Of a stretch of 64,000 bases of DNA, positions 19,679 to 38,565 are shown one piece after another. The notes beneath the pieces were generated by a model. That model was given only the letters and a program-made list of their open reading frames with translations, searched no databases and was not told the origin of the DNA. How positions within the stretch are numbered: position 1 is the first letter of the stretch; every line of letters starts with the position of its first letter. The stretch is taken from positions 1 to 64,000 of IMG/VR virus record IMGVR_UViG_3300031787_007614, one strand, 5' to 3'. The position numbers were made by a program, and so were the translations under genes.

Positions 19679-20524
19679 TTATTTGCCCCATCCATTACCC
19701 CAGAGGTCCACATGCAATCGTGGGCTGTACCAATAACCTCGTTTGAGTGCTTCGTCGGCAACGTGAATTCTATTGCCATCATACACACTCACAACACCGC
19801 CAACAGGCATCACAAAAACTGGTCCGCTAAATCCACGGGTTCGATAGTCGTCAACTACTAGATCAAGCTCTTTGAAATCATCAATGTGACCAACAACAAA
19901 CTTCAAATAGGTAACACCGTGAGTTTCGTAATCCCAAATAATGTCAGGTTTGATAGCATCTTCATACTTTTCACCACTGACACTAAGTTTAGGACTTACT
20001 GAGAATGTGATCTCGCCAAACCATTCAGACAGATACTGTTTGAATTCTCTTGTGAGTTCTTGAGTACCATTGGTTTCAAATGTAATGTGTCGCAGTCCAC
20101 GTTCGTGCAACAGATTCAACAGTTCAGGATATGCACGTTGCCAACCTAGCAATGGCTCGCCACCTGTGATCACAAGATGCACTGAATTGCCGTTTGGTTG
20201 TTGCCAGTGGCCATTGGGCAACAGCGCAGCCATTTTGTCAACTAACTCTTGTGCTGTGTATGTGGGACTTAGATGTTTAAAGTCAGGATGCCAACTTGCA
20301 TACGAATCGCATCCTGTATTAACCAACGGGAGCTCTTCAAAAGTCTTGTAGAGATGAACGCTCTTTGCGACGTCATCTGCCTCAGTGCTCTTATCACCGG
20401 GTTGGCATCCAAATCCCGAACACGTAAAGTTGCAACCGAAGGTTCGTAAGAAGATAGAAGGAACTCCAATATAGCGTCCTTCGCCCTGAGCAGAATAAAA
20501 TAGTTCACTTACTTTTAATTTCAT
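19679..20524 (-). CDS. queE: 7-carboxy-7-deazaguanine synthase
   Basis: E.FYS.QGEG, FLR..GCN..C, CDS, ITGGEP, ETNG, SPK, RLH. Confidence 0.95.
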   Translation of the reverse strand: MKLKVSELFYSAQGEGRYIGVPSIFLRTFGCNFTCSGFGCQPGDKSTEADDVAKSVHLYKTFEELPLVNTGCDSYASWHPDFKHLSPTYTAQELVDKMAALLPNGHWQQPNGNSVHLVITGGEPLLGWQRAYPELLNLLHERGLRHITFETNGTQELTREFKQYLSEWFGEITFSVSPKLSVSGEKYEDAIKPDIIWDYETHGVTYLKFVVGHIDDFKELDLVVDDYRTRGFSGPVFVMPVGGVVSVYDGNRIHVADEALKRGYWYSPRLHVDLWGNGWGK

Positions 20525-20527
20525 TGT

Positions 20528-21238
20528 TTATAACCTTGTTACCTTTGACATTCCCGACTTGCGGGGATTCTTATTTAGATTGATACTTTCATCATGCATT
20601 TTAACACGAGTAGATTGTTTTGTCACCCAACCCGGTAATACTGCATCTAAATAGGCCAAATGTTCTTCGGGGCTGGGATGTGGGTCACCGTTTCTATTAG
20701 GATATCCAGTGTTTTTAAATACAGTTTTGTCATACCCTGGTTTGATACTTAAAACCACATTTTCGTACAATCGCATGACATCTCTGTGTTTGCTAACATT
20801 GTCGGACGGAAATGGCATGGCCATTAATTCTACCATACTCAAAAATTCCCATTTTAGATTGTGTCGAGATTCCAGTAGAGTTTTAACTGCTTTGATGCAT
20901 GCCAGATCTCTAATTAGGAATCCTCTTTCATCCATGTGTGTTTTAAGGTATTCTTTGTTAAACACATTGGTTGCGAAGTGTGCATTTCCGGGTGTGTGCC
21001 ATCGACCGTCAACATATCGATCCTCTCGATCTAAACTGGTCCAGCATACAACAACAGTATCTCCGTCACCAAAACAATGCCTTTGATCAGCCTCCATGAC
21101 TGAATTGAAAATATATTGATTTCCTCCTCCTGCCTGGCCCCAATTTTCAAAGTGATCAAATTCTGGAGCAAGACAATCTGCCCAGGTGCTCCAGCGATAG
21201 TTTGTAAAACTACAACCAAACGTAAACAGTCGGCGCAT
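20528..21238 (-). CDS. SGNH/GDSL-like protein, paralog 2
   Basis: FGCSFT, G.GN, D.HP...H. Confidence 0.65.
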   Translation of the reverse strand: MRRLFTFGCSFTNYRWSTWADCLAPEFDHFENWGQAGGGNQYIFNSVMEADQRHCFGDGDTVVVCWTSLDREDRYVDGRWHTPGNAHFATNVFNKEYLKTHMDERGFLIRDLACIKAVKTLLESRHNLKWEFLSMVELMAMPFPSDNVSKHRDVMRLYENVVLSIKPGYDKTVFKNTGYPNRNGDPHPSPEEHLAYLDAVLPGWVTKQSTRVKMHDESINLNKNPRKSGMSKVTRL

Positions 21239-21240
21239 TG

Positions 21241-23223
21241 TTAGGCTGCTAGTTTTGCCCTGGCGCCAGCATCTCCGCGTTTGGCAACGTCTACCTGCGT
21301 GTCAGCGTTCAAGCATTCAACTGTGGCTTTTCCAAAATTTCTACGTCTAGCAAAATAAAATAGTTCTAAGAAACGTGGAAAGCTCATAGTTTTATCTTCT
21401 GGAAACTCCAGTTGATATTCTCTTGGCGCATGTACAAGTTTGTGATCAAAGCTGAGATATTCCCAGATGTTGTAGTCTAATTCTAAAACCTCAGGATAAG
21501 TGTTCATAGCATCGTAAGCCACATGGTATCTGCGTTGGAATCGCATGATGTTCTCCAACAACACAGGCGGTAAATCATAACGACTCATGAACTTTTCTAA
21601 CATGTCAAAGATATTGTGATTTTGTTTTTCCACATGCATGTTCAACACAGTTCTGTGTATGAGGTTCCATCCGTGAATTTCAATGCCAATCTTGGGATGA
21701 TTGATTCGGCCATTGGTCATCCAACTGCGATAGTACTCGCGAACTTCTTCTTGTTCGCGGTGGATCCATTCATGACCTTGCACGTATTCAAACAGGTCTG
21801 CATAAAACTCGCTGTAGGGCACACCCTGATACTTGAACACCAATCGACTCAACAGTGTGCTGATGCCATTGATGTGGAAGGTATTGATAAACCATGAAAA
21901 AATATGTGCTTCCATCATGACATCAAACGGCATGTCTTTGGTGCCAGTGATAATGTCAATGGCTTCTTCAATGTGTTCGTTGGAGTATGATCCAGAAAAA
22001 TAGTCTGTTACACTTTGATTGGTAATCTTAAACAACTTCTTCTGCAACAGGTTCATTTCGGCATTTTCCAACAACTGAGCCTGGAACACCGTGAGACCAG
22101 TATGATTGCCCATTTCAAACAAAGTCCAAAAGTTTTTCTTCCAAGACTCAAGACTTTCACCAGGTAGGCCCAAGATAAGTTCAGTGTAGGTTGGAATGTT
22201 ACGTTGCTCACACAGCTCAAATACTTCGTTGAGCTTGTTCATTTCCATGTTTTTGCGACGAATGTTTTCCAATACATCCAAGTCAAGACTTTGCACACTC
22301 AGCGTTAGACCTTGATTGAAGCCTCGGGCATCCAGCAATTTTTTAACAATGTCCACAACTTCTTTCTTTTGATTCTTGGCCCAGGCCACAGAGAAAGTTC
22401 TCGGAGAACCATACTTTTCTTGACATTCAATAATCTTGTCTGCAATCAAACTGTCACGTTCGGCAAACATGCCAAAGTTAGCGTCAGTAATTGATATGAA
22501 ATCAAAGTTGTGCTTAGCCATCCATTCCAACTCATGGTACACACGTTCTAAACCAAACTTCTTGACCTTGTTGTATGTCAAGCTACCCCAGTCACAAAAC
22601 GTACAAGCAAATGGGCAACCACGAGAAGTTTCTAGTGTGCCTTGCCACATGATGTCAGGATTTGCAGCCATTAGGTCATCAAATACACCTGCCAGATACG
22701 GGCTAGGAATATCTTCAAGAGTTTCAATGCGCTTGGCATCACCTGTGCTTATAGCTTCGCCGTCTCGATTGATCAGCAAGCCAGGTATTGACTCCCAGTC
22801 TTTGCTGTCATATGCCAGCATGAGATTTCTAAATGTGATTTCACCTTCGTAGCAAATCACAATGTCCATGAATGGTTCTTTGCGAAACAGATCTTTGTCT
22901 GTGATTGCAGGTTCGGGACCGCCAAATATGGTCAACACGCCAGGATTGATCTCCTTGAGCCTGCGAGCCAATGCATAGTTGAAATTGTGATTCCACACAT
23001 AAGTGCTAAAAGTCACAACATCATTTTCAGCCAGTCGTTGTGCAATTGGCTCTATGTTGTCCCGGCGCCACACCCATTCAGTCACTTGCCATGCATCACG
23101 TATGCTGGGTTCCGCAACTGCATAACTCCAAATCACACCTGCTGAGTATGGCAGGTAGTAGGCATTGAGTTCTTTAGGACCTTGTTGGAAGTTTGGTTGT
23201 ACCCAGGCAATTTTTCTTTTCAT
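21241..23223 (-). CDS. B12-binding radical SAM enzyme
   Basis: STYVWN/GGP cobalamin domain, ETSRGCPFACTFC, DANFG, ILGLPGE. Confidence 0.92.
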   Translation of the reverse strand: MKRKIAWVQPNFQQGPKELNAYYLPYSAGVIWSYAVAEPSIRDAWQVTEWVWRRDNIEPIAQRLAENDVVTFSTYVWNHNFNYALARRLKEINPGVLTIFGGPEPAITDKDLFRKEPFMDIVICYEGEITFRNLMLAYDSKDWESIPGLLINRDGEAISTGDAKRIETLEDIPSPYLAGVFDDLMAANPDIMWQGTLETSRGCPFACTFCDWGSLTYNKVKKFGLERVYHELEWMAKHNFDFISITDANFGMFAERDSLIADKIIECQEKYGSPRTFSVAWAKNQKKEVVDIVKKLLDARGFNQGLTLSVQSLDLDVLENIRRKNMEMNKLNEVFELCEQRNIPTYTELILGLPGESLESWKKNFWTLFEMGNHTGLTVFQAQLLENAEMNLLQKKLFKITNQSVTDYFSGSYSNEHIEEAIDIITGTKDMPFDVMMEAHIFSWFINTFHINGISTLLSRLVFKYQGVPYSEFYADLFEYVQGHEWIHREQEEVREYYRSWMTNGRINHPKIGIEIHGWNLIHRTVLNMHVEKQNHNIFDMLEKFMSRYDLPPVLLENIMRFQRRYHVAYDAMNTYPEVLELDYNIWEYLSFDHKLVHAPREYQLEFPEDKTMSFPRFLELFYFARRRNFGKATVECLNADTQVDVAKRGDAGARAKLAA

Positions 23224-24089
23224 GCATTATTTACTTGTTTTTGATCAGTATCTTTTTTTGCAAAATGTGTATGCGGGTTGGCAAATTGAACCATTTGACT
23301 GTTTACATCATTCTGTGCTAGTTTTTCCCAGGGATCTTGACTGCCGTTGAACACGTTGGTAAAGAATGAAAGATCCATACCTAATTCACTGCGCATGTAT
23401 GTGGCCAATTTTGCACAGTCTCGGTGTCGCAGGTCCATTTGCTGAACGCTGTGAAAGTCCAACGGATCATCGGGGCGACCTTCTAGCATGGCACGATTTT
23501 TAAATGTTTCATCGCCGTTGTTGCCAGTCAAGTCGTGGCGATCATGTTCTACCCATACTGGAATTCTTTCCCAAATGTCCAGCATGTATGCCTGTTGACT
23601 CAACCACCCATCTTGTGTGGGATGGGGACTGATGTATCCCAACAGTTCATACCATTTGCGTGGAACTATTGGAAAAATTGAGTAGGGGTGGTCGTTGTGA
23701 GTATGGAATGCCAGCAATCTAAACTTGCCATTGTATTTCAAAATCTCACTGTCCCACCCCTGGGTTTGCATGATGGCATCATCATTCCAAATAACAAACC
23801 AAGGAGCCAGGGCTTTCTCAGCCATCTTGTTGTTGTAGATATGCAATCTGATATATCCCAATGGGTCAAACAACATGGCGGTATAGTGATAACCGTGTGA
23901 GTCTAACCAAGGCTGCAATTCAGTTTGGAAGTACGTTTTGCCTTTGTCATCGTCTTTGTCAAATCCAAACATGATTTGCAAACGATGAGGATTGTCAGCC
24001 AGTTCAAACAAACTGCGAACACTTTTGCCCAACGCTTCTGTACGACCTCGAGTGGCCAACAGTAAAGATATATCAAATTCTTGTGCCAT
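23220..24089 (-). CDS. Glycosyltransferase (GT-A/GT2-like)
   Basis: SLLLATRGR, WNDD. Confidence 0.75.
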   Translation of the reverse strand: MAQEFDISLLLATRGRTEALGKSVRSLFELADNPHRLQIMFGFDKDDDKGKTYFQTELQPWLDSHGYHYTAMLFDPLGYIRLHIYNNKMAEKALAPWFVIWNDDAIMQTQGWDSEILKYNGKFRLLAFHTHNDHPYSIFPIVPRKWYELLGYISPHPTQDGWLSQQAYMLDIWERIPVWVEHDRHDLTGNNGDETFKNRAMLEGRPDDPLDFHSVQQMDLRHRDCAKLATYMRSELGMDLSFFTNVFNGSQDPWEKLAQNDVNSQMVQFANPHTHFAKKDTDQKQVNNA

Positions 24090-24112: not shown

Positions 24113-24733
24113 TTATGCTTGATTGTCTGCAGCCAGCTTTTTCTGCAAGTGATTCAACAAGAAACCATACGCAGGCAGAATAACCAACAGACTCACAATG
24201 ATCTTACTGATTGAATTGTTGGTTGCAACAATGTGCCAGTTAGCAGCCATGAACTCATTTGCGCCACCAGCAAAGGCAGTAAAGAAGAACACATAGGTAT
24301 CAAAGAATGTGCTCACAATTGAACTCAATGCAGGAGCAATCCACCAAGTGGCGTACTTTTCACGAATGTATTGGAACACGTACACATCAAGCAAGTTGCT
24401 CACAAAGTATGCAACACCCGAGCCAAGACCAATGCGGAAAGCAACTGAGTCAGGAGCACCGCCCAGTTTGACCACTGCCATTGACACAATGATAGCAGGG
24501 ATGAATGCCAATGCAATCACCGCACGACCAGTTTGTTTGCCTAACATTCGCACAGTCAAGTCGGTCAACACAACCACTAGTGGGAATGTGAATGCGGCTG
24601 CTGCCAATGGTGCACCAAACACTGAGAATTTGAATTGCACAATGTAGTTGCTGATAGCAATGATAATGATATGTGCCAGCATGAGCTTGTAGGCCAATGC
24701 ACGGTCAACGCCACTTAAGATTCGATCTAACAT
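24113..24733 (-). CDS. yhhQ: preQ0/preQ1 transporter (VUT family)
   Basis: SN..VQ, FTFP....TDLTVR, RI..GS..AY, DT..FF. Confidence 0.9.
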   Translation of the reverse strand: MLDRILSGVDRALAYKLMLAHIIIIAISNYIVQFKFSVFGAPLAAAAFTFPLVVVLTDLTVRMLGKQTGRAVIALAFIPAIIVSMAVVKLGGAPDSVAFRIGLGSGVAYFVSNLLDVYVFQYIREKYATWWIAPALSSIVSTFFDTYVFFFTAFAGGANEFMAANWHIVATNNSISKIIVSLLVILPAYGFLLNHLQKKLAADNQA

Positions 24734-24750: not shown

Positions 24751-25257
24751 TTAAACGAATAGATCTTCCATCCACTCGCGATGGCCTTCTCTAAAAGCCA
24801 TATTGCTCTGTGTTTCGCGCACTTCCACACGATAGCACCAGAGACGCTCTGCTTCACCCGGTCCCCACAGGTCCGGAATGTAAACACCGTTCACATACTT
24901 GTACAGCATGTCTGCCAAGCCTTCACACCCTAAGCGTGGCAGGATTGTGAGTTTGGCCATTTTTTTCTCTTGCAAGAGCTTGTATGTCGCCAGCTCTGGA
25001 TCATCTGCAGACACCAGCAAGGTATGATCAAATTGATCTTCTAATGTCTTTTTAAGTTCTTTGAGACCGCCATAGTCAGCGGCCCAGTTACGCACATCCA
25101 GGTTGTCTGTGCCAAAGTAGAACTTCATTGAGAATGAGTAACCGTGAATTAGATTGCAGTGGCTGTCGGCACGCCATTGACGGTATGCGCAGGGAAAAGC
25201 ATCATGATACTCTTTGGTGCTGGTGTACTTGTATTGTACTGGTTGATTTGTTGCCAT
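24751..25257 (-). CDS. queD: 6-carboxytetrahydropterin synthase
   Basis: C..IHGY, DYG.LK, FDH, E.LA, V.ET. Confidence 0.88.
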   Translation of the reverse strand: MATNQPVQYKYTSTKEYHDAFPCAYRQWRADSHCNLIHGYSFSMKFYFGTDNLDVRNWAADYGGLKELKKTLEDQFDHTLLVSADDPELATYKLLQEKKMAKLTILPRLGCEGLADMLYKYVNGVYIPDLWGPGEAERLWCYRVEVRETQSNMAFREGHREWMEDLFV

Positions 25258-26021: not shown

Positions 26022-26426
26022 TTATGGTTTTTGGTAACTACCTGTTTTGTAGTTAGCTTGTCCAATAATAACCCCACGTACTCCGCCCACTGGGTCAGCA
26101 CAGTCACCTGCTCGGCGTGGAATCAAATGCACATGTGGATACATCACAGTTTGACCTGCTTCACGACCCATGTTGATGCCGATATTAAATGCATCACATT
26201 CGCCATTGACAACCATTCTGCGACCATGCAGCATGGCTGATTCAAAACAGTCCATGATTACCGCATCGTTATTGTACTGTGGCACAAACAACAAATGACC
26301 GGGTGTGACAGGATAACGATCACGAAACACAGCCACGTGATAGTCTGACAGTTCTGTCACACGGTCGTCCCAGGGTGCAATATCTTGTTGATATGCAATT
26401 TCTAAATCAGTCATAATAGTTTTCAT
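26022..26426 (-). CDS. HIT family hydrolase
   Basis: D.YPVT.GH.L..P, AGQTV..PHVHLIPR. Confidence 0.92.
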   Translation of the reverse strand: MKTIMTDLEIAYQQDIAPWDDRVTELSDYHVAVFRDRYPVTPGHLLFVPQYNNDAVIMDCFESAMLHGRRMVVNGECDAFNIGINMGREAGQTVMYPHVHLIPRRAGDCADPVGGVRGVIIGQANYKTGSYQKP

Positions 26427-27377: not shown

Positions 27378-27491
27378 TTAGATCTCCTCCAAATGGTATT
27401 GTGAGTAGGGATAGTTCGCTTGCAACCATTCCAACAATCCTTCTTCAACTGGAAATTGAATGTTGCCAGTATAATTAGTAATAATTATCAT
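27378..27491 (-). CDS. Hypothetical protein, 37 aa
   Basis: MIIITNYTGNIQFPVEEGLLEWLQANYP...; fills the gap with ATGA coupling. Confidence 0.5.
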   Translation of the reverse strand: MIIITNYTGNIQFPVEEGLLEWLQANYPYSQYHLEEI

Positions 27492-27898
27492 ACGCAAACT
27501 TCCTCTTTGAGATATCGTTTGAGTTCTTTGTCATTGGGTTCTACAGTATAGTTCTTCTTGAAAAAAATTTCATAACTATCACTGCCGTATTTGCCAATGC
27601 CGTACAAATCGGTAGCATCATCACCATTCCAAGTCATGTAGTCTTGACTCATTTTTTTCAATCTGGTGTATCTTACATTAGCCATACCTAATGGTGCAAT
27701 AATGCTTTTTACAAAATCTTCATCGGCTGCGATCAATGCTTCCGGCGTTGGGAACCAGTATAAAAATTCTGGCAAGGTTGTTTTTACAGATTTGCGGCCT
27801 GTTTGATTCAACATGATCACTCCAACCATGTGTTCCCATGAGTTAGAGATTTGTTGTTGAACCATCAGATCATCTCGTAATGCATGAAAAAATATCAT
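27488..27898 (-). CDS. HhH DNA glycosylase (MBD4/endonuclease III-like)
   Basis: W...V..I.LNQT, PLG....R, LYGIGKYG.DSY.IF. Confidence 0.85.
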   Translation of the reverse strand: MIFFHALRDDLMVQQQISNSWEHMVGVIMLNQTGRKSVKTTLPEFLYWFPTPEALIAADEDFVKSIIAPLGMANVRYTRLKKMSQDYMTWNGDDATDLYGIGKYGSDSYEIFFKKNYTVEPNDKELKRYLKEEVCV

Positions 27899-30317: not shown

Positions 30318-30910
30318 TCAACAATCTTGATATTTCTTAGATCAGGATATGGCACATACACAGGTTTAGGATTGTGTTCCTTGACACCTTGTAGCAATGC
30401 CACACCTTGAATGGCATCTTCAATACTGGGCTTGTAGTGATAGCCCACATGAAATGTCTTTTGGTCCTGCCAAGGTGCCACAGTCAAGTCTCTGCCATCA
30501 TAGCGTTGGCGCAATATGGTTTCATATGCTTTTTTATCATCCAACAATATAGCACCACCATGCCCAATAGCCAATGGCTTTGTATGTCCAAAACTCAAAC
30601 ACTGCATGGTGCCTGGCCGATACATATCCTGTTCCAATCTGCGAGCTGAGTCCCAAATTCTAGTGTAAGTGAATTCATACTCGCCTTCCCAATGCTGCCA
30701 GTCAATATCGTGATAGACATAGTGAATGCCTAACTTGTGCATGGTCATAGGAATGCTCAAATAAGTGTAAGGTGTAAACTTACAAGCTCGTACTCGATCA
30801 TATCGCAAGCAAAGTTCAATGGCATGTGTACAGCAATCAGTCATGATTGCATACGGTGCTCCTGTGAACTCTGCTAGTTCTTCTTCAAACTTTTTTATCT
30901 TGTCGAACAT
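30314..30910 (-). CDS. DegT/DnrJ-type PLP aminotransferase (short)
   Basis: FE..LA, T.A..L, DSA, SF...K.L..G.GG. Confidence 0.82.
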   Translation of the reverse strand: MFDKIKKFEEELAEFTGAPYAIMTDCCTHAIELCLRYDRVRACKFTPYTYLSIPMTMHKLGIHYVYHDIDWQHWEGEYEFTYTRIWDSARRLEQDMYRPGTMQCLSFGHTKPLAIGHGGAILLDDKKAYETILRQRYDGRDLTVAPWQDQKTFHVGYHYKPSIEDAIQGVALLQGVKEHNPKPVYVPYPDLRNIKIVE

Positions 30911-31847
30911 ACCAGTTCCATGCGTGTTGAATCATGTCATCTAGCTCATAATGACGCCATGCTCCTGCTATCAAATTAAACTTTTCTGAACTGGCAGTAA
31001 GTACAGGAGGGTCACCGGCTCTACGCTTGCCAACAACAACATTCAATGGTTGTTGTGTTTCATCAAGTGCGGCTTCAATAATGCCGTGATTGCTTGTGCC
31101 CATGCTGGAGCCAAGATTGTAAACGCCCGCAGGGATTTTGTGATATAACGCCAGAACGTGGGCCCGGGCAATATCATCCACATGCACGTAATCACGCACA
31201 CATGTACCATCCTCAGTGGGGAAATCGTTTCCGTTTAACACAAAATCTTTTTGATCCCTTATGCTTTCAAGCACTCTAGCAATAATATGTGTGGCACCAG
31301 GCTCTTGACCATGCCTGCCTTTGGGGTCTGCACCACATGCATTGAAATAGCGAAAACTAACATAGTCAAGACCGTATGCCCGGTGATAGCTTTCCAGCAT
31401 CATGTCAATCATCAGTTTAGATTCGCCATAAGGACTAACAGGTTCGTTGGGATCCACTTCATGTATGGGATTCATGACGGGCTCACCGTATGTGGCTGCT
31501 GAACTTGAAAACACCAATCTACAACGAGGCATGCTTTGTTTAACAATATCCAACAACTTCAATGTTTTGGCCACATTGTTGTTGTAGTATTCTGAAGGGT
31601 TCTGTACTGAAGGCCCCACAAGGCTGGTGCCAGCACAATGAATGATAGCATTGGGTTGCTTTTGTATGATCCAACTCAGTGCTACATCACTTGCAAAGTC
31701 CTGATACAAGAATCCATCGGGCACACCTCTAAGATGTTCAGGAGGCTGTCTGCGATCAATGCCGTATACTTCATGCCCGGCATCTTTCAATGCCAGCATG
31801 GTCTGACCACCAATGTACCCGGCTGATCCAGTTACAATTACAATCAT
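30885..31847 (-). CDS. galE: UDP-glucose 4-epimerase
   Basis: G.AGYIG, SSAA.YG, PYG.SK, RYFN, DGT.VRDY.HV.D. Confidence 0.93.
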   Translation of the reverse strand: MIVIVTGSAGYIGGQTMLALKDAGHEVYGIDRRQPPEHLRGVPDGFLYQDFASDVALSWIIQKQPNAIIHCAGTSLVGPSVQNPSEYYNNNVAKTLKLLDIVKQSMPRCRLVFSSSAATYGEPVMNPIHEVDPNEPVSPYGESKLMIDMMLESYHRAYGLDYVSFRYFNACGADPKGRHGQEPGATHIIARVLESIRDQKDFVLNGNDFPTEDGTCVRDYVHVDDIARAHVLALYHKIPAGVYNLGSSMGTSNHGIIEAALDETQQPLNVVVGKRRAGDPPVLTASSEKFNLIAGAWRHYELDDMIQHAWNWYVRQDKKV

Positions 31848-33058
31848 TTTTCAATCTTTACAACTTGATATTTTTCGTGAGAAGCGTGGTCACGATAGCG
31901 GTTGCCCGCTCTATTCCATTGCTCACCGCTACCACTAATAATATCAATAACGCGATCCACAGTGGCATTGTTCCAATCTGAAATAAGTCCCATGTTGTGG
32001 TGCGGCTCGCGAAGTAGGTTTTGCATTTTGTGATAAGCATCATCTATGCTCCAGGGAATATACAGTCTATTGGGATCGTTCGCGAAGGTTTCAGGAAAAC
32101 TGCGATACGCTGGATATAGCACATTGCATCCAACAGTATCGGCCTCTGATACGGTGTTTGAAACCCAATCTTGTAAAGCACAATTAAACAACACACGAGT
32201 ATTGTTGAGATGACTATAGTATTCATTCTTGCTTATATTGTCGTAGATCTTGAGCTTGCCTTCTGCCTCCATACGGAGGGCACGTTCAATATAGTCTGGA
32301 TTGTTGGATCGGAGAGGTCCGCCACTGTATATTGCAAACTCACACGGTTCGGAGGTAAGCTCACCATACATCTCAATAAGGTCCATGAAGAATCCAGGTT
32401 GTTTTTCCTGATCGAAACGGGCTGCAAAACCCACTCGTCTCGGTCTTTCAGCAAACGGCGTGATATTCTCTGTACCGCCAATTCTTTCCAGAACCTCTGA
32501 TTTTCCAAATGCCAGACCGGAAATGTTGTAGATTGGAGCAGTCCATCCAGCGATGCGCATGTGCGCGACCATTTCTTCATTGGTAGCCAATACTGCACCC
32601 CCCGAGAAAGCCACCATCTCATTGACCATTTGTTCATACAAGTTCATCCACTTTGCCATACCCCACACATGCACAAAGTCATCAGGATCAATGGCCTGTG
32701 CCAAACAACGAACATAAATCTTTGGACATTGTTCTTGTGGAATCTGATTCATGATGTAACCAAGGCTTTCAAAGCCCGGCTGGAACATGTCTTCAAAGTA
32801 GATCACATCGTCACCGGTAACATCGCCGTTCTTCATGAGCTGAACCAAGTTCATCATTTGGCTCATGGCAAAGAAACTGCGTCCGTGTGCGTCTAACACT
32901 TGACCTACTGAGATAGCTTGTGTGTTGTCAATTGTAGTGCCAGGCACATACACAACATCAAGACCTCTGCGGTCAAACACACGTCGATTCCACTCTGTGA
33001 GTTGTAGTGTGTAGCGGGCTTCATAACTTTCCAAGCCCATGTAAAATAGTTTTCTCAT
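31844..33058 (-). CDS. GT-B fold glycosyltransferase
   Basis: R.DQEK, N..SEA...G, YP..RSFPE. Confidence 0.7.
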   Translation of the reverse strand: MRKLFYMGLESYEARYTLQLTEWNRRVFDRRGLDVVYVPGTTIDNTQAISVGQVLDAHGRSFFAMSQMMNLVQLMKNGDVTGDDVIYFEDMFQPGFESLGYIMNQIPQEQCPKIYVRCLAQAIDPDDFVHVWGMAKWMNLYEQMVNEMVAFSGGAVLATNEEMVAHMRIAGWTAPIYNISGLAFGKSEVLERIGGTENITPFAERPRRVGFAARFDQEKQPGFFMDLIEMYGELTSEPCEFAIYSGGPLRSNNPDYIERALRMEAEGKLKIYDNISKNEYYSHLNNTRVLFNCALQDWVSNTVSEADTVGCNVLYPAYRSFPETFANDPNRLYIPWSIDDAYHKMQNLLREPHHNMGLISDWNNATVDRVIDIISGSGEQWNRAGNRYRDHASHEKYQVVKIEK

Positions 33059-34008: not shown

Positions 34009-34452
34009 TTAGATAGCAATGTTAATACTAGGGCGGTGAGTTTCATACTTAATAAGAGCTCCGTTTTCACCATCTTCGGAGACCTCAATCCAGACTGAGC
34101 GTTCTGGATACCGTGCGGCAATTTGCAAATACAAATCGTCTGACATCATTTCACATGACTTGTAGTCGAGTTGGACGGTTCCTGACTCGTAGAGTTTTTG
34201 TAGCCATCGTTTGAACTGGATGAATTCAATGTCTCGATCATTGTGTACAACATCAATCCACACCCGGAAGTGGAAGATATGACGGTGAGGAGTACCAAGG
34301 AAACTAACATCATACTCATCGCCCGTCTTAAGGGCTGGATCTGTTGCGGCTGCGGGGTAGAAGTGGATGCCTTCTTTTTGGAAGGTAACCCAGATTCTTC
34401 TTTGTGCGGCATATTTGATTCTTTCAATTTGTTCACGTTCATCTTGTATCAT
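34009..34452 (-). CDS. Second QueD-like T-fold protein (DpdL-type, putative CDG decarboxylase)
   Basis: H..P, LGTPHRHIF (LxxxHRHxF), RDIEF, SCE, V.EDGE. Confidence 0.72.
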   Translation of the reverse strand: MIQDEREQIERIKYAAQRRIWVTFQKEGIHFYPAAATDPALKTGDEYDVSFLGTPHRHIFHFRVWIDVVHNDRDIEFIQFKRWLQKLYESGTVQLDYKSCEMMSDDLYLQIAARYPERSVWIEVSEDGENGALIKYETHRPSINIAI

Positions 34453-34982
34453 TTGATTACTTCATCCTTTGTGTATTGGTCCCAAGAGGTAAATGTTTTT
34501 CTATCCAGCAAGTCATGCAGGCTGTGACACCATACTCCTGGGTTGGTTGCTTTGAAATCTTTGTCGTCTAGCTTGATAGTGGCATTGTAGCCTAGCAGTT
34601 TAATATAAGGCAGTTTCACTGAAATCATAGGAACAAATTGTGCTTGTTCGCACAAGCTACCTTCGCACAATCCTTCCACAGCACTTGAATCAAGATCCAA
34701 GGTACACCAGTATCCTCGATCCAGCCACGGTTGAATCATCTGTTCCCAGGCAGTCCAGACTCCAGCATCGTTCATAGTGGGGTTTGGAAAACTTTGATTG
34801 GCGCCAAAGTAGATGTGTGTGATTGGATTTTTACTCTTGTGGTCTGACTCACCCAGTTGCCACATGATTTGATCTGCATCTTGCAGTCCGACCACAAACA
34901 ATGTACGGTGACCGGCTACAGGACTGGCCTCAACTTCTGTACCTACAAAGAAATTGGTATCTTCGTGTCCGGGTCTATTCAT
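34449..34982 (-). CDS. Hypothetical protein coupled to the DpdL-like gene
   Basis: G.EVE....G..TLFV, HIYFGAN, K.DD..F..TNPGVW. Confidence 0.75.
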   Translation of the reverse strand: MNRPGHEDTNFFVGTEVEASPVAGHRTLFVVGLQDADQIMWQLGESDHKSKNPITHIYFGANQSFPNPTMNDAGVWTAWEQMIQPWLDRGYWCTLDLDSSAVEGLCEGSLCEQAQFVPMISVKLPYIKLLGYNATIKLDDKDFKATNPGVWCHSLHDLLDRKTFTSWDQYTKDEVIK

Positions 34983-35956
34983 AATGTAATCTCAAATAAG
35001 TTAGATAAATGTTTGTTGTTTGCTTTTTTGTCTGTCTTAGTTTTTTTCATGCCAGGGTGTACCTTTTTATTTTTAAATTCAGTAGCATCAAAAATTGATC
35101 TTGGCACAAAGAAACGATCCATAACTCCAGATACTTTGGTATAACTTTTACCAAGGTCATTGCCGTTAAAATCACACATCACATAATCACCTAACCCCAT
35201 CATAAGATTGATAATATCATTGCAAGTGTACCCAAATCGTTTACAATGTGTATCTCGCAGTTCGACCTGAACCACGGGTTGATACTTAGCAATGGTTTGT
35301 GTTGCACCTTCTAATGCAAACAGTTCAGAACCTTCAATATCAATCTTAATAAGATCAACATTTTCAAACCCAAAACTGTCAAGTGTGCGTTGCTCTGCAG
35401 TCTGTGTGGGATTGTTGGTAGTTTTGCCATCAAGTAACACAGCATCACCGCGACTGCACTCGTTGGTTTTTTGTTCCATGGTAATAATTCCAGCGACTTT
35501 ACCTAATGCATATTCAAAAAACTCAATCTCTCCTATCAAGTCAAGACTGGCAAATGTGCCATTGGGGAACTTGAACCAGCCATCTGGACGATCCGGCTGA
35601 TGTCTTACTTGTTGCAGTTTGCTATCCCAATAACGACCTTGAAGTTTTGCATTTTTTGCAATGTCTACATTGAGTTTCATTAGTTCCATGCTAGACTGCA
35701 TGGGCTCAAAGGTTTTTACATGTTGGCACCAGGTGGCATATTCAATTGCGTTCATGCCAATGTTGCCACCAATGTCAATTACAGTTCTTGCATTAGGTAG
35801 CAAGCGACGATTCATTACCAAATTGCGAGCCTGGTATGGACCGTTTTCTCTTGCCATACGCTGTTCATAAAGTTTGTCATTGTCCCAGATCCAATATTGC
35901 CTGCCTATGCGGTTTGTTACTAGTTTTTTGTTGTTGATATCAAATAGTTGTGCCAT
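34979..35956 (-). CDS. FkbM-family methyltransferase
   Basis: IDIGGNIG, FEP, TLD....DLIKIDIEG.E. Confidence 0.9.
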   Translation of the reverse strand: MAQLFDINNKKLVTNRIGRQYWIWDNDKLYEQRMARENGPYQARNLVMNRRLLPNARTVIDIGGNIGMNAIEYATWCQHVKTFEPMQSSMELMKLNVDIAKNAKLQGRYWDSKLQQVRHQPDRPDGWFKFPNGTFASLDLIGEIEFFEYALGKVAGIITMEQKTNECSRGDAVLLDGKTTNNPTQTAEQRTLDSFGFENVDLIKIDIEGSELFALEGATQTIAKYQPVVQVELRDTHCKRFGYTCNDIINLMMGLGDYVMCDFNGNDLGKSYTKVSGVMDRFFVPRSIFDATEFKNKKVHPGMKKTKTDKKANNKHLSNLFEITL

Positions 35957-36027
35957 GTTGTTGCCTTATAAAGAAATCCTGCATACATATTTAACAGTAT
36001 ACAGGATCACGAGAGAGAAAGCAAGAG

Positions 36028-36951
36028 TTACTTCTTCTTTTTCCAACGATCTTTGAAGGCATCAGGGCACCATCTGGTTGCAATTTCCATTGGATCATTT
36101 TGAGCCAATACATCTAATGCTTCAGGAGTCAAATCGATTAACTTGCGTTCTGTCGAACCAGGAGTTATATTGTAGAGACTCTGCTTTGTTTCTTCCCTAA
36201 CATCTTCAAAATTTGAATCAGGAAGATCTTCAAACAAGCAAATAAATTCCTTGTAGTAAGAATTACGATTCCATCTATTATAGGTTACTTCTTGTATTGT
36301 TGCATTGGTTACGTCAATGAATCTTCCGTCAACATACTGTAACACTCCGTCGTTATATTTTTCAAACGGACGTAAATTTTCGTTAGTAGTGGGACCACCG
36401 TGTGTTCTTTCTGACGTATGAACGGTCGTTGCTAAAGCATGATTCATTGCATATCTAGCCATGTCTTTAGGGCTGACTCTCCTGCTGTTTTCGATCACTT
36501 CTCGAATTAAATCTTTTTCAATTTGTTTAATAGGATATGTGTGCTCGCAATGCCATTCATTGGCAAAGTTATCACCTGATAAACCGGCCAACCCTAGCTC
36601 ATGCATTCTTCCAATGGCCTTGCCAGTGATTAGATCTGTACCGCTATTGCCGGTAGCATGTTGTAATCCCATAACATCTGAATGAAATTTTCTGATACCG
36701 CCATTACTCCAATGCACAGTGTCACCAGAAATGCTCGCCTGGTTATATTCAGGTCCTGCGGCAAAACCACCATTGAAAAATCTTTTGTAATAGCAATATT
36801 CTTTGAGTTCTTCGATTGTGCGGGCTTTAACATGATTAGCAAATTTTCGCAAGTCGCCGGCCATAAATGCTAATCTTACACCGGCCGTTATAGCCTTTAG
36901 AACGGCTTTGTTGGGATCTTGTGCAAGTAGTTTCTGAATATTCAAAACCAA
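36028..36951 (-). CDS. Hypothetical protein with EHxxP motif
   Basis: 307 aa; own promoter TTGACT-17-TATAGT at 36976-37004. Confidence 0.7.
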   Translation of the reverse strand: MVLNIQKLLAQDPNKAVLKAITAGVRLAFMAGDLRKFANHVKARTIEELKEYCYYKRFFNGGFAAGPEYNQASISGDTVHWSNGGIRKFHSDVMGLQHATGNSGTDLITGKAIGRMHELGLAGLSGDNFANEWHCEHTYPIKQIEKDLIREVIENSRRVSPKDMARYAMNHALATTVHTSERTHGGPTTNENLRPFEKYNDGVLQYVDGRFIDVTNATIQEVTYNRWNRNSYYKEFICLFEDLPDSNFEDVREETKQSLYNITPGSTERKLIDLTPEALDVLAQNDPMEIATRWCPDAFKDRWKKKK

Positions 36952-37026
36952 CTCCTAAGTTGTTACAATGCACACACTATAACACAAGAACAATTTTGAG
37001 TCAATCAAATTGTTAAAATAAAAGTA

Positions 37027-38565
37027 TTATATTTCTGTGCTCAGGTTGTCCAATTTGTCACTGTCCAAATCTACTTCGTCGGGCTCCGACTCACTGTCCT
37101 CATATTCAAACAATGCATTGAATTGAGTAGTAGCATTCACAGTCTTCTTGCCCTTAAAGCCTCGTGTGCCCACAATCTCCATCCAATATGTACTGTATTT
37201 CTCAACAATAGATTCGGCTTGTTCTCTTGTGGGTGCAGTGAAAATATCTTCCACAATGTCTTCAAAGTAAGCATAGTCACCAGTGCTACGACGCATCATG
37301 GCAGGATGTTCTCCTGCATCAAAACGTCTATTGGCTTCTTGTACTGCGGTCAAGTGCATCCAGACATTATGGCCCATGAGTAAAGCATATGAGAAACTGT
37401 CCCACGATGTCTTGCCTTCTTTACCATTTTTATTTAGGTCGCCTGGCTTGTAGATACAGATGTCTTTCATCTTGAGAAGTTTGCTTATGGGGCTATCTTC
37501 CCAACGTGGTACTACTCCATCGGCAACTATACTTGTACCCCAGGCACGTGTGTCAGTGGCGTACTTTTTGTCGTCGGCTGTAGGAGCCATGCGATACGAC
37601 CATTTTGAGTTGTTTTCAAAGACATTTTCAAAGTAGACCTGTCCGTTTGCTGTTGCAAGGAACGGACTGGCGCAGTCAAACGAGATTGTGAAGTTTGGAT
37701 TGACATATTTTCTCACGGCCCTTTGGATTACAGTTAATAAAACAGCCCACTCCAGTTTGGAGGTTCCCAAGAAGTGCATCCAATCATGGACACCTTCTTG
37801 AAGTAAATTGTCATAGCGCAATGCCACAATACGTTTGAGTACCAAGTGAACATCACACATGTTTTGTCCGCCCATGGCCCAGCCATTGAAATGCGTATCT
37901 GGATATTTTTGTGGATCGCAATAATCCTTCATCATCTGATACCATTCTTCTGCATGAGTATGGTTACCACCTTGCAACACATTCAAGAACTTGGTACCAC
38001 CGTTTGCCACACCCTTGCGATGTTTCATGAAGTATTCGTTGTTGTAATGTGTTGCCTTGACTGCCTCATCCAAAGTGCTAATGCCAGACTTCCATCCATT
38101 CTTTTCATTGATAACAAAACTTGGAATATCAAGTGTCATAGCATAGTCTGCTATACCATCTAACCAGGCTAGTGCTTGTTCTCGTTTGGCCTGAGCCTTG
38201 GCACAACCTGAGTTGGCTCGCCAATCACCTTCCCACACACCTTTAGCAATCTGGAAACCACCAGAGTCGCCCAGCATGATTGTGCCAGGCTCTCTGTTCC
38301 GTACCATGTCTTCTGACCAGTCTTGTTTAGCAAGATCGAGATTTGCATGCCCTCCAGAGTATAGGGACCAACGGTAAGGGAAAAGTGCTTTGGTAGAGTT
38401 AAGCCAATTAAGTTGCTCCATGTCACTAAGGCCCTGAGGCAATCTCGCCGGATCCACATATGGTTCATTCCTTTGCTTGCCTATGAACGTGGCATAGAAC
38501 CCGCTGATGGCCGGAAGGAACACAGCGTAGTCCGATTGCTTGGCAGTTAAGTCGTCTTGGGTCAT
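37027..38565 (-). CDS. TGT-fold guanine transglycosylase (DpdA-like)
   Basis: DSGGFQ, LDIP, VLQG, GWAMGG, HFLG, SFD; no CxCxxC zinc site seen. Confidence 0.85.
   Translation of the reverse strand: MTQDDLTAKQSDYAVFLPAISGFYATFIGKQRNEPYVDPARLPQGLSDMEQLNWLNSTKALFPYRWSLYSGGHANLDLAKQDWSEDMVRNREPGTIMLGDSGGFQIAKGVWEGDWRANSGCAKAQAKREQALAWLDGIADYAMTLDIPSFVINEKNGWKSGISTLDEAVKATHYNNEYFMKHRKGVANGGTKFLNVLQGGNHTHAEEWYQMMKDYCDPQKYPDTHFNGWAMGGQNMCDVHLVLKRIVALRYDNLLQEGVHDWMHFLGTSKLEWAVLLTVIQRAVRKYVNPNFTISFDCASPFLATANGQVYFENVFENNSKWSYRMAPTADDKKYATDTRAWGTSIVADGVVPRWEDSPISKLLKMKDICIYKPGDLNKNGKEGKTSWDSFSYALLMGHNVWMHLTAVQEANRRFDAGEHPAMMRRSTGDYAYFEDIVEDIFTAPTREQAESIVEKYSTYWMEIVGTRGFKGKKTVNATTQFNALFEYEDSESEPDEVDLDSDKLDNLSTEI

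What the first reader, a model, noticed from the sequence alone, without database searches (positions are those of the whole stretch)
19679..38565. QueC-less 7-deazaguanine pathway with DpdL-like and DpdA-like genes beside the replisome
Seen: folE, queD, queE, yhhQ, a second T-fold protein with LxxxHRHxF, and a 512-aa TGT-fold enzyme near the clamp and polymerase; no queC or queF in the window. Known: FolE-QueD-QueE yield CDG, DpdA inserts deazaguanines into phage DNA, and as I recall the QueD paralog DpdL with this motif decarboxylates CDG. Inference: DNA carries 7-deazaguanine or a derivative; the YhhQ importer suggests salvage as a second input.
Basis: partly seen in the sequence, partly recalled or inferred. 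Interest (0 to 1): 0.72.

Follow-up and report, generated by a model that had tools for sequence, protein, structure and literature searches.

The report
Phage deazaguanine DNA-modification gene island
A 364-kb freshwater jumbo phage carries, next to its DNA polymerase, genes that most likely swap guanine in its own DNA for a 7-deazaguanine base made without QueC, and these genes always travel with a sugar-transferring enzyme, which hints at a sugar-decorated form nobody has described.

Summary
FolE, QueD, QueE, YhhQ and a DpdL-type T-fold protein (LGTPHRHIF) are all at the stated coordinates. The 512-aa protein matches no Pfam, NCBIfam or PHROG model. Its AlphaFold model nevertheless has a TGT fold (Z 19) with all three catalytic aspartates. 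queC and queF are missing from the whole complete genome, not just the window.

The transglycosylase belongs to a large, unannotated sister clade of DpdA2 (hhalign 97.9%). Its homologue in Pseudomonas phage PA5oct sits in the same gene order, and PA5oct DNA is reported to carry modified G. The best reading is post-replicative exchange of G in phage DNA for a FolE-QueD-QueE-DpdL product. No DNA chemistry could be tested here.

A GT4 glycosyltransferase, an unknown 177-aa protein, an NDP-sugar epimerase and a short DegT-like protein are core parts of this module. Among the phage genomes examined, GT4 occurs only where DpdL is paired with a DpdA2-type enzyme. It was not found in phiST-type (DpdA3) phages, whose DNA carries plain dDG. 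The final base may therefore be a glycosylated derivative.

YhhQ and most tailoring genes are rare accessories.

Verdict: a new variant of a known kind.

The parts
37027..38565 (-). TGT-fold base-exchange enzyme (512 aa), from a sister clade of DpdA2. Residues 468-512 form an acidic, disordered C-terminal tail.
   Evidence: AF2 model pLDDT 89.6. Foldseek TGT E 2e-7. VIA-align Z 19.3, 18.6 and 18.5 to bacterial, archaeal and eukaryotic TGT. Invariant D100 and D297, near-invariant D146. hhalign to DpdA2: 97.9%, E 4e-13.
34449..34982 (-). p177, a conserved protein of unknown fold and function. It lies between the transglycosylase and dpdL in most relatives and is homologous to ACP17 gp122.
   Evidence: Present in 70 of 80 relatives' loci. 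BLAST to ACP17 gp122, E 4e-11. Model pLDDT 80 with no convincing fold match.
34009..34452 (-). DpdL-type QueD paralogue, the predicted CDG decarboxylase.
   Evidence: LGTPHRHIF motif. phrog_17812 E 7e-36. Homologous to ACP17 and phiST DpdL. Carries every residue that is invariant in the family.
31844..33058 (-). GT4-family (GT-B) glycosyltransferase, linked to dpdL.
   Evidence: Atlas GT4 clusters. PF00534 matched by 11 of 24 family members. Adjacent to dpdL in ACP17, PA5oct, X1, BUCT-ZZ01, BCSR5 and Phosso. Present in 61 of 80 and 143 of 157 IMG/VR loci.
30885..31847 (-). Extended-SDR NDP-sugar epimerase/dehydratase.
   Evidence: PF01370 E 3e-54. Present in 48 of 80 relatives' loci.
30314..30910 (-). 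Short (198 aa) DegT/DnrJ/EryC1-like protein with an SFGHTK lysine motif.
   Evidence: PF01041 E 2e-16. Sequence read. Present in 46 of 80 relatives' loci.
27895..28587 (-). GTP cyclohydrolase I (FolE).
   Evidence: PF01227 E 2.8e-39.
24751..25257 (-). QueD-type CPH4 synthase.
   Evidence: PF01242 E 5e-16. phrog_2389 E 1e-35. It is the only PTPS Pfam hit in the genome.
19679..20524 (-). QueE-like radical SAM enzyme (CDG synthase).
   Evidence: phrog_2076 E 5e-55. Five NCBIfam QueE models hit below their cut-offs.
24113..24733 (-). YhhQ/Vut_1 transporter, an accessory gene.
   Evidence: PF02592 E 2e-21. Present in only 3 of 80 relatives' loci.
26022..26426 (-). HIT-domain protein, a semi-conserved member of the module.
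   Evidence: PF01230 E 7.5e-10. Present in 22 of 80 loci.
27488..27898 (-). Short HhH-GPD (EndoIII-like) protein that overlaps the end of folE. Accessory.
   Evidence: PF00730 E 3.5e-9. Present in 4 of 80 loci.
21241..23223 (-). B12-binding radical SAM C-methyltransferase (KedN5-like). Accessory tailoring gene.
   Evidence: NF033712 E 2e-76, below its cut-off; PF02310 and PF04055. Present in 7 of 80 loci.
23220..24089 (-). Second, weakly supported glycosyltransferase-like protein (289 aa).
   Evidence: phrog_14945 E 3e-9. Present in 21 of 80 loci.
34979..35956 (-). FkbM-type methyltransferase inserted between the transglycosylase and p177. Accessory.
   Evidence: PF05050 E 1e-16. Present in 2 of 80 loci.
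36028..36951 (-). 307-aa protein of unknown function, a lineage-specific insertion.
   Evidence: No Pfam, NCBIfam or PHROG hit. Present in 1 of 80 loci.
38562..39401 (-). Weak sulfotransferase-like protein.
   Evidence: PF03567 E 1.8e-4, at its cut-off.
39322..40044 (-). Clamp-like replication protein that flanks the island.
   Evidence: phrog_12062. 29% identical to the Phosso protein annotated as a sliding clamp, 36% to PA5oct gp170.
41019..43679 (-). Family B DNA polymerase, flanking the island.
   Evidence: PF00136 E 1.7e-34 and PF03104 E 2.5e-18.
16891..17925 (-). 5'-3' exonuclease marking the other syntenic border. Homologous to PA5oct gp159.
   Evidence: PF02739 E 8e-20. 46% identical to PA5oct gp159.

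Best explanation
The island between the 5'-3' exonuclease and the clamp/polymerase genes is a phage DNA guanine-modification system.

Inferred from family assignments: FolE, QueD and QueE turn GTP into 7-carboxy-7-deazaguanine (CDG). With no QueC or QueF anywhere in the genome, the pathway cannot reach preQ0 or preQ1.

Predicted in the literature and never shown biochemically: the DpdL-type T-fold paralogue converts CDG, most likely by decarboxylation, to 7-deazaguanine.

Fold and catalytic residues shown here; the DNA substrate inferred from its DpdA2 kinship, its position in the replication module and the PA5oct phenotype: the 512-aa TGT-fold enzyme exchanges guanine in double-stranded phage DNA for that base after replication. 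The three TGT/DpdA aspartates would act as D100 acid/base, D146 base recognition and D297 nucleophile.

Co-conservation shown here; function inferred: the GT4 glycosyltransferase, p177, the NDP-sugar epimerase and the DegT-like protein belong to the same functional unit. They probably either complete the reaction or add a sugar to the inserted base. The product would be dDG or a glycosylated 7-deazaguanine that shields the DNA from host nucleases.

YhhQ, the methyltransferases, the HhH-GPD protein and the sulfotransferase-like protein are strain-level accessories.
For: Gene identities.

queC and queF absent from the complete genome.

DpdL membership: and PMC10516641.

TGT fold and catalytic residues: with residue roles from PMC10164549.

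Kinship to DNA-acting DpdA2:
- hhalign 97.9%, E 4e-13.
- Reciprocal HMM cross-hits.
- BFVD structural hit to the nt-1 protein, E 7e-10.
- nt-1 and VH7D DpdA2 insert deazaguanines into DNA (PMC10516641).

PA5oct:
- gp168 is 36% identical to the 512-aa protein.
- It lies in the same gene order with GT4, DpdL and QueE, between the polymerase and the exonuclease.
- PA5oct DNA resists G-site restriction enzymes and is targeted by modified-base-sensing END nucleases (PMC12191111).

Other family members sit beside deazaguanine genes:
- Vibrio phage 2.275.O, beside QueF, YhhQ, QueC and FolE.
- P0227, beside PTPS and FolE.
- P0216, beside PTPS and QueC.

The module is conserved in 80 and 157 IMG/VR loci, with QueC found in 0 of 157.

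GT4 phyletic pattern.
Against: No chemical or read-level evidence for modified DNA in this phage: all public runs holding it are kept only as assembled contigs.

DpdL's decarboxylase activity is a prediction. ACP17 and phiST DpdL co-expressed with their DpdA gave no dDG in E. coli.

The fold matches tRNA-acting TGTs as well as it would match a DNA-acting one. The phage also encodes the four GUN-anticodon tRNAs.

Plain 7-deazaguanine offers no obvious hydroxyl for a glycosyltransferase, so the GT4 acceptor is unknown.

The QueE assignment rests on a PHROG match; the NCBIfam QueE models score far below their cut-offs.
Confidence: 0.7

Rival explanations
1. Plain dDG, as in Cellulophaga phage phiST. 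DpdL decarboxylates CDG, the transglycosylase inserts 7-deazaguanine, and nothing further happens to the DNA. The GT4, epimerase, DegT-like and other sugar genes would serve an unrelated purpose, such as glycosylating virion proteins or host envelope components, and would merely share the early-gene region.
For: phiST has the same FolE/QueD/QueE/DpdL set and its dG is fully replaced by dDG. 7-deazaguanine has no hydroxyl to glycosylate. Many of the sugar-tailoring genes in the window are rare accessories.
Against: GT4 lies directly beside dpdL in seven distantly related phage lineages with different hosts. It is the only GT4-family hit in the whole ACP17 and PA5oct genomes, and in both it sits at that site. 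It is absent genome-wide from all six DpdL + DpdA3 phages checked and from two DpdA2 + QueC phages. It is present in 143 of 157 IMG/VR DpdL loci.
Confidence: 0.3
2. tRNA target. The TGT-fold enzyme modifies position 34 or 15 of phage or host tRNAs with a deazaguanine base that is made by the cluster or imported by YhhQ.
For: Structural similarity to bacterial, archaeal and eukaryotic tRNA TGTs is Z 18-19. The phage encodes 30 tRNAs, including Asp-GUC, His-GUG, Asn-GUU and Tyr-GUA. YhhQ is a known preQ0/preQ1 importer family.
Against: By profile comparison the nearest relatives are DpdA2 enzymes that act on DNA. The PA5oct homologue sits in a phage with modified G in its DNA. There is no QueC or QueF to make preQ0 or preQ1. 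The gene lies inside the replication module, and YhhQ is absent from most relatives.
Confidence: 0.06
3. A small-molecule branch making a pterin glycoside. FolE plus a PTPS-like T-fold enzyme (the 'DpdL') would make a tetrahydropterin, which GT4 would glycosylate as cyanobacterial and Chlorobium pteridine glycosyltransferases do. This would explain why GT4 is linked to dpdL rather than to the transglycosylase.
For: Pteridine glycosyltransferases that act on tetrahydrobiopterin exist (PMC5683033, PMC4133829). The closest GT4 homologue (64% identity) is in a Synechococcus phage. DpdL's chemistry is unproven.
Against: DpdL lacks the catalytic Cys of QueD/PTPS at the motif position. The adjacent SDR is an NDP-sugar type (PF01370), not a sepiapterin-reductase type. 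phiST has DpdL, no GT4, and dDG in its DNA. The pattern also requires a DpdA2-type transglycosylase, which a pterin pathway would not need. Most hosts are not known producers of pterin glycosides (my own knowledge).
Confidence: 0.07

Closest known systems
Cellulophaga phage phiST dDG system (FolE, QueD, QueE, DpdL, DpdA3; Cui et al. 2023, PMC10516641)
   Same: A QueC-less FolE/QueD/QueE set plus a DpdL with the LxxxHRHxF motif and a TGT-superfamily enzyme. The genes lie near replication genes.
   Different: The transglycosylase is not DpdA3 (hhalign probability 19%). phiST has no GT4-family gene anywhere in its genome, and p177 was not found near its dpdL. Window DpdL is only 33% identical to phiST DpdL.
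Acidovorax phage ACP17 cluster (QueD, FolE, gp122, DpdA2 gp123, gp124, DpdL gp125, QueE)
   Same: It shares QueD (52% identity), DpdL (57%), a p177 homologue (gp122), a GT4 homologue (gp124), FolE and QueE. It lacks QueC and sits beside the polymerase and primase.
   Different: ACP17 uses a canonical DpdA2, which is only remotely related to the 512-aa enzyme (BLAST E 0.047). Its cluster is about 5 kb with no extra tailoring genes. Its DNA chemistry is unpublished in the library searched, and reconstitution failed.
Pseudomonas jumbo phage PA5oct gp159-gp173 region
   Same: Same transglycosylase clade (gp168, 36% identity), GT4 (gp167), DpdL (gp166), QueE (gp162), clamp-like gp170 and exonuclease gp159, in the same order next to the polymerase. 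PA5oct DNA is reported to carry modified G.
   Different: The PA5oct module is about 7 kb, against about 21 kb here. FolE, QueD, YhhQ, HIT, HhH-GPD, the epimerase, DegT-like, B12-rSAM and FkbM genes are not in that PA5oct stretch; its PTPS is elsewhere (gp230). gp168 is annotated only as a hypothetical protein.
DpdA2 of Vibrio phages nt-1 and VH7D
   Same: TGT superfamily with DSGGxQ, (L/F)DxxP, QG, HxLG and SxDSxS/T motifs. Like DpdA2, it lacks the active-site His of DpdA1 and bDpdA. DpdA2 is shown to insert preQ0, preQ1 and CDG into DNA.
   Different: A separate clade: about 19% identity, found only by profile methods, with no Pfam or PHROG model. Here it is paired with DpdL rather than with QueC, QueF or ArcS.
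Bacterial Dpd system (DpdA/DpdB/DpdC, Salmonella Montevideo)
   Same: The same base-exchange fold and the same three aspartates.
   Different: No DpdB-type ParB-like ATPase or DpdC was seen in the island. The inserted base cannot be preQ0, because QueC is absent.
T4 glucosyl-hydroxymethylcytosine, as an analogy for the GT4 step
   Same: A GT-B glycosyltransferase encoded beside base-modification and replication genes.
   Different: The genome has no ThyA-type hydroxymethylase. The acceptor would have to be a deazapurine, for which there is no precedent.

Membership tests
TGT/DpdA superfamily | TIM-barrel tRNA-guanine transglycosylase fold | tested here: met
   AF2 model pLDDT 89.6. Foldseek: the 50 best matches listed are all TGT, E 2e-7, probability 1.0. 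VIA-align Z 19.3 over about 305 residues.
TGT/DpdA superfamily | Three invariant active-site aspartates (acid/base, base recognition, nucleophile) plus the gating Phe and the Gly-rich loop | tested here: met
   D100 (with F104) and D297 are invariant and D146 is at least 90% conserved in 53 family members. They align in register with TGT D102 and D156 and the QG and GG loops, and with the DpdA2 motifs. Residue roles are taken from PMC10164549.
TGT/DpdA superfamily | Match to Pfam PF01702 (TGT) | tested here: not met
   No Pfam hit at E 0.01. No PF01702 hit in the six-frame genome search at E 1. The clade is too divergent for the curated model.
TGT/DpdA superfamily | Zinc site (CxCxxC...H) of the tRNA TGTs | tested here: inconclusive
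   The family consensus keeps only one Cys in this region and an (L)LMxHN motif that aligns with the TGT His-Asn. Model coordinates could not be inspected.
DpdA2 subfamily | Sequence relationship to nt-1 and ACP17 DpdA2 | tested here: inconclusive
   Profile-profile comparison gives 97.9%, E 4e-13 over 186 columns, and HMM cross-hits of 1e-7 and 8e-6. Pairwise BLAST gives only E 0.047 at 19% identity, and tblastn in either direction fails to find the other clade. The protein is best called a sister clade.
DpdA (any subfamily) | Exchanges guanine in DNA, not tRNA | not testable with these tools
   Support is indirect only: the PA5oct phenotype, the replication-module context, and the kinship to DpdA2.
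DpdA3 subfamily | Homology to phiST CGPG_00065 | tested here: not met
   hhalign probability 19%. BLAST shows nothing. The BFVD structural hit is only E 9.5e-3.
DpdL | Homology to phiST and ACP17 DpdL | tested here: met
   BLASTP E 9e-48 to ACP17 and 4e-17 to phiST. phrog_17812 E 7e-36.
DpdL | LxxxHRHxF in place of the QueD CxxxHGH motif, plus the shared His and Glu residues | tested here: met
   LGTPHRHIF. L52, H56, H58, F60, H30, H70, E76, E101 and E126 are invariant across 18 sequences. R57 is not invariant: PA5oct and Ahp1 have HFH.
DpdL | T-fold / PTPS superfamily | tested here: inconclusive
   No Pfam hit at E 0.01. hhalign against phage QueD gives 75%, E 2.6e-5 over 46 columns. Atlas neighbours include clusters carrying PTPS, TM 0.73/0.82. 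A PDB profile search found no PTPS.
DpdL | Genome has FolE, QueD, QueE and a DpdA but no QueC | tested here: met
DpdL | CDG decarboxylase activity | not testable with these tools
   The activity is only predicted in the literature, and heterologous expression failed.
QueE (CDG synthase) | Match to a curated QueE model | tested here: inconclusive
   phrog_2076 'QueE-like' E 5e-55. Five NCBIfam QueE equivalogs hit at 41-53 bits, against cut-offs of 200-300. 47% identical to the BUCT-ZZ01 QueE.
FolE, QueD and YhhQ | Score above the Pfam gathering threshold | tested here: met
   PF01227: 134.8 bits against a cut-off of 27. PF01242: 59.1 against 22.4. PF02592: 77.4 against 27.2.
GT4 glycosyltransferases (GT-B) | Glycos_transf_1 domain and GT-B fold | tested here: met
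   The window protein itself scores 14.3 bits, below the cut-off, but 11 of 24 family members match PF00534 (best E 8e-12). The PDB profile hits are GT1-family proteins. Atlas structural neighbours are GT4 at TM 0.7-0.8.

The most novel reading that the evidence does not exclude
DpdL combined with a DpdA2-type transglycosylase, GT4, p177 and (here) NDP-sugar tailoring enzymes makes a glycosylated 7-deazaguanine in phage DNA. This would be the first sugar-bearing purine DNA hypermodification. It would be widespread in an abundant freshwater jumbo-phage lineage and also present in ACP17, PA5oct, X1, BUCT-ZZ01, BCSR5 and Phosso. It would explain why DpdL plus DpdA2 alone gave no dDG in E. coli.
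Probability: 0.3. Interest if true: 0.85.

Novelty: new variant of a known kind. Interest (0 to 1): 0.62.

Why it matters
7-deazaguanine DNA modifications are a major way for phages to escape restriction and CRISPR. This locus adds three things.

- **An unannotated transglycosylase clade.** The clade is very large: at least 7,158 90%-identity clusters and 965 50%-identity clusters. Current Pfam, NCBIfam and PHROG models do not detect it. It appears to be the commonest partner of DpdL in metagenomes.
- **Candidates for the missing enzymes.** The DpdL route has not been reconstituted, and p177 and GT4 are concrete candidates for what is missing.
- **A clean phyletic pattern.** GT4 occurs only where DpdL is paired with a DpdA2-type enzyme. 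This predicts a DNA base chemistry not yet described.

PA5oct, ACP17, X1 and BUCT-ZZ01 are cultured, so the prediction can be tested directly.

Tried and rejected
1. Megablast of the region against GenBank phages found no match.

2. The weak QueC hit at about 107 kb in the genome is a NadE NAD synthase, not QueC.

3. p177 as a cluster-less QueE-like domain. The lead was the best VIA-align hit, QueE at Z 6.1, plus an N-terminal resemblance seen by eye. hhalign against QueE gives a probability of 0.7%, so it was rejected.

4. p177 as a subunit of the transglycosylase. Complex prediction gave no answer, score 0.00. This is evidence neither for nor against.

5. The 307-aa protein as the equivalent of ACP17 gp124 or PA5oct gp167. 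There is no similarity. The real equivalent is the 404-aa GT4.

6. GT4 glycosylating hydroxymethyl-pyrimidines. The genome has no ThyA-type hydroxymethylase, only ThyX.

7. A read-level test for modified bases. All runs holding the phage are kept only as Logan contigs.

8. A structure prediction for DpdL. 

9. An HMM profile of DpdL against PDB sequences found no PTPS.

10. A single-sequence and a profile HMM search of the 512-aa family against PDB. TGT appeared only at E 2.3, although in the correct register.

Full report
**Setting.** The window is the first 64 kb of a 364,404-bp virus record with direct terminal repeats, rated 100% complete. Public runs that hold it are freshwater and lake metagenomes. 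From 16.9 to 43.7 kb every gene is on the minus strand, and adjacent genes often overlap by 4 bp.

**Checking the observation.**
- FolE, 27895-28587: PF01227, E 2.8e-39.
- QueD, 24751-25257: PF01242 E 5e-16, phrog_2389 E 1e-35. It is the only PTPS Pfam hit in the genome. Its CxxxHGY motif is shared with the phiST, ACP17, BUCT-ZZ01, pf16 and RHph_I1_18 QueD.
- QueE-like, 19679-20524: phrog_2076 E 5e-55. The NCBIfam QueE models score only 41-53 bits, far below their cut-offs.
- YhhQ, 24113-24733: PF02592, E 2e-21.
- Second T-fold protein, 34009-34452, carrying LGTPHRHIF.

Cui et al. 2023 define DpdL as a QueD paralogue in which CxxxHGH becomes LxxxHRHxF. It occurs in phages with DpdA, FolE, QueD and QueE but no QueC, and is proposed to be a CDG decarboxylase. 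The authors could not obtain dDG when they expressed phiST or ACP17 DpdL with the matching DpdA in E. coli (PMC10516641).

The window protein is 57% identical to ACP17 DpdL and 33% to phiST DpdL. It keeps every residue that is invariant across 18 family members. The Arg of HRH is not invariant.

QueC and QueF are absent from the whole genome. The single weak PP-loop hit is a NadE NAD synthase.

**The 512-aa protein.** No Pfam, NCBIfam or PHROG model recognises it, and PF01702 finds nothing in the genome. It nevertheless belongs to a very large family: more than 7,158 clusters at 90% identity and 965 at 50% identity, none of the members listed carrying a Pfam annotation.

I aligned 53 diverse members (A1). 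S70, D100, S101, G103, H264 and D297 are invariant, and D146 is nearly so. An AlphaFold model built from this alignment is confident, with pLDDT 89.6 and pTM 0.89. Residues 468-512 form a disordered acidic tail.

The fold searches agree:
- Foldseek against the PDB: the 50 best matches listed are all tRNA-guanine transglycosylases (E 2e-7, probability 1.0).
- VIA-align gives Z 19.3 (T. maritima TGT), 18.6 (archaeosine TGT) and 18.5 (QTRT1) over about 305 residues.

The motifs GDSGGFQ, LDIP, LQGG, GWAMGG, HFLG and SFDCASPF align in register with TGT D102, D156, Q203, G229/G230 and the nucleophile D280 (the last by structure and by the DpdA2 alignment). These correspond to the three aspartates shown to be essential in Salmonella DpdA (PMC10164549).

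**Which kind of transglycosylase.** ACP17 gp123 belongs to the DpdA2 family of Vibrio phage nt-1.
- The 512-aa family aligns with a DpdA2 profile at 97.9% probability, E 4e-13, over the catalytic core.
- It aligns with DpdA3 (phiST type) at only 19%.
- HMM cross-hits between the two clades are 1e-7 and 8e-6. Pairwise BLAST is insignificant, and tblastn from either side does not retrieve the other.
- In BFVD the best structural matches are the Vibrio phage 2.275.O protein, an Achromobacter phage 'tRNA guanine transglycosylase' and the nt-1 protein. phiST DpdA3 ranks 31st.

I therefore call it a sister clade of DpdA2. DpdA2 enzymes have been shown to put preQ0, preQ1 and even CDG into DNA.

**Evidence from relatives.** Three lines link this clade to deazaguanine genes.
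- *PA5oct-like Pseudomonas jumbo phages.* The homologue gp168 (36% identity, annotated as hypothetical) lies between the polymerase/clamp-like genes and gp167, gp166 (DpdL), gp162 (QueE) and gp159 (exonuclease). The order and borders are the same as in the window. A preprint reports that PA5oct DNA resists several restriction enzymes with G in their sites and is attacked by nucleases that sense modified bases. That preprint names QueE and a PTPS but no transglycosylase (PMC12191111).
- *Vibrio phage 2.275.O.* The homologue sits beside QueF, YhhQ, QueC, an amidotransferase and FolE.
- *Two distant metagenomic members.* One sits beside PTPS and FolE, the other beside PTPS and QueC. Two further contexts were uninformative.

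Like other DpdA subfamilies, the clade is therefore a transglycosylase that pairs with different base-synthesis routes.

The 404-aa protein at 31844-33058 is a GT4-family glycosyltransferase. The evidence is Atlas neighbours, PF00534 in 11 of 24 family members and GT1-family hits in a PDB profile search.

Its homologues lie directly beside dpdL in ACP17 (gp124), PA5oct (gp167), Xanthomonas phage X1, Synechococcus phage BUCT-ZZ01 (64% identity), Burkholderia phage BCSR5 and Sinorhizobium phage Phosso.

In 80 IMG/VR loci from the window's own lineage, the common order is: clamp-like, transglycosylase, p177, DpdL, GT4, epimerase, DegT-like, FolE, (HIT), QueD. How many of the 80 loci hold each gene:

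| Gene | Loci |
|---|---|
| Transglycosylase | 72 |
| p177 | 70 |
| GT4 | 61 |
| Epimerase | 48 |
| DegT-like | 46 |
| FolE | 50 |
| FkbM methyltransferase | 2 |
| 307-aa protein | 1 |
| YhhQ | 3 |
| HhH-GPD | 4 |
| B12-radical-SAM methyltransferase | 7 |

Many of these loci are cut short by contig ends, so the counts are lower bounds. The last five rows mark those genes as rare accessories. Across 157 DpdL loci, GT4 is present in 143 and QueC in none.

Among cultured phages the pattern is sharp:
- DpdL with DpdA3 (phiST, MA9V-3, Ahp1, D479, RHph_I1_18, Bakedbeans): no GT4.
- DpdL with DpdA2 or the 512-aa clade: GT4 always present.
- DpdA2 or the 512-aa clade with QueC (pf16, nt-1, Vibrio phage 2.275.O): neither DpdL nor GT4.

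Whole-genome searches confirm this. GT4 is absent from all six DpdA3 phages and from pf16 and nt-1. ACP17 and PA5oct, used as positive controls, each have a single hit, and it is at the dpdL site.

**Constraints on the GT4 acceptor.**
- The genome has no ThyA-type hydroxymethylase, so hydroxymethyl-pyrimidines are not available as acceptors.
- The neighbouring SDR is an NDP-sugar epimerase/dehydratase (PF01370, E 3e-54).
- Cui et al. do not mention any sugar or glycosyl gene.
- Literature searches found no report of a glycosylated deazaguanine in DNA.

**p177.** This protein (34449-34982) is homologous to ACP17 gp122. Its model has pLDDT 80. The only real structural match is to an unnamed protein. 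The best PDB Z is 6.1, to QueE, which is within background, and profile comparison with QueE rejects that lead. A complex prediction with the transglycosylase gave no answer. Its function remains unknown, but its invariant acidic and histidine residues suggest an enzyme.

**Mechanism and confidence.**

*Shown here:*
- gene identities;
- the TGT fold and catalytic residues;
- absence of QueC and QueF;
- synteny with PA5oct;
- co-conservation of the module.

*Inferred from established family functions:* GTP goes to H2NTP (FolE), then to CPH4 (QueD), then to CDG (QueE).

*Inferred from a published prediction:* DpdL converts CDG to 7-deazaguanine.

*Inferred from kinship and context:* the transglycosylase exchanges G in phage DNA after replication.

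*Speculative but supported by the phyletic pattern:* GT4, p177 and the sugar enzymes complete or decorate the modification.

I put 0.7 on DNA deazaguanine modification by this module. Within that, I put roughly 0.3 on a glycosylated end product and roughly 0.3 on plain dDG with the sugar genes unrelated.

The tRNA-target rival (0.06) draws on the 30 phage tRNAs, including all four GUN species. It does not fit the kinship to DpdA2 or the PA5oct phenotype.

The pterin-glycoside rival (0.07) is suggested by known pteridine glycosyltransferases. It does not explain why a DpdA2-type enzyme is required, nor the dDG in phiST DNA.

**Novelty.** The QueC-less DpdL route is published. The new elements are the unannotated DpdA2-sister clade, its abundance, and the GT4/p177/NDP-sugar extension with its clean phyletic pattern. 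Hence: a new variant of a known kind.

Noticed in passing
window 799-4090; genome 355.8-362.2 kb: The phage encodes 30 tRNAs and a tmRNA (2616-3134, tag ANDEKFLMAA). They cluster at the two genome ends, next to the terminal repeats.
   Followed up: partly
window 37027-37161 (residues 468-512 of the 512-aa protein): The transglycosylase ends in a disordered, strongly acidic tail (EYEDSESEPDEVDLDSD...). It resembles the C-terminal tails by which T4 and T7 replication proteins dock on their partners (my own knowledge).
   Followed up: no
window 17906-18634, 20528-21238, 28655-29365, 33055-33966: Four proteins with SGNH/GDSL-like N-terminal motifs are scattered through the island. One has a DUF6071 hit and one has weak GDSL hits. 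The other two rest only on reading the sequence by eye.
   Followed up: no
window 47486-47986 and 48366-49469: A ferritin-like protein (PF00210, E 1e-23) and a further radical SAM protein (weak hit, E 2.6e-6) lie just beyond the polymerase.
   Followed up: no
genome C1 about 106.7-107.6 kb (L001:961-1833): A phage-encoded NAD synthase, NadE (PF02540, E 1e-49). It produced the only weak QueC-model hit.
   Followed up: yes
L014:7212-8363 (Vibrio phage Bakedbeans gp176) and L018:7395-8276 (Chryseobacterium phage MA9V-3): In these phages the DpdL domain is the C-terminal part of a longer protein (383 and 293 aa). The N-terminal part has no match in my sets.
   Followed up: no
L016 (Burkholderia phage BCSR5): One phage carries both a DpdA3-type and a DpdA2-type transglycosylase, together with DpdL and GT4.
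   Followed up: no
L009:3748-4209 (BUCT-ZZ01) and L002:15946-16380 (PA5oct gp163): A xanthine-guanine phosphoribosyltransferase-like gene sits inside the deazaguanine cluster of two relatives (27% identity to each other, E 1e-9). This hints at a nucleotide-level route for the modified base. It has no counterpart among the window's island proteins compared (16.9-41.1 kb).
   Followed up: no
L025, L047, L068, L070, L074, L080, L095, L097 (IMG/VR relatives): In some close relatives the GT4 slot downstream of dpdL holds a glycosyltransferase only 21-29% identical to the window's GT4. This looks like replacement of the gene within a conserved slot.
   Followed up: partly
L003:14905-16695 (Vibrio phage 2.275.O NVP2275O_468): This homologue of the transglycosylase is 596 aa and aligns to the query in two pieces. 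That suggests an insertion relative to the window protein.
   Followed up: no
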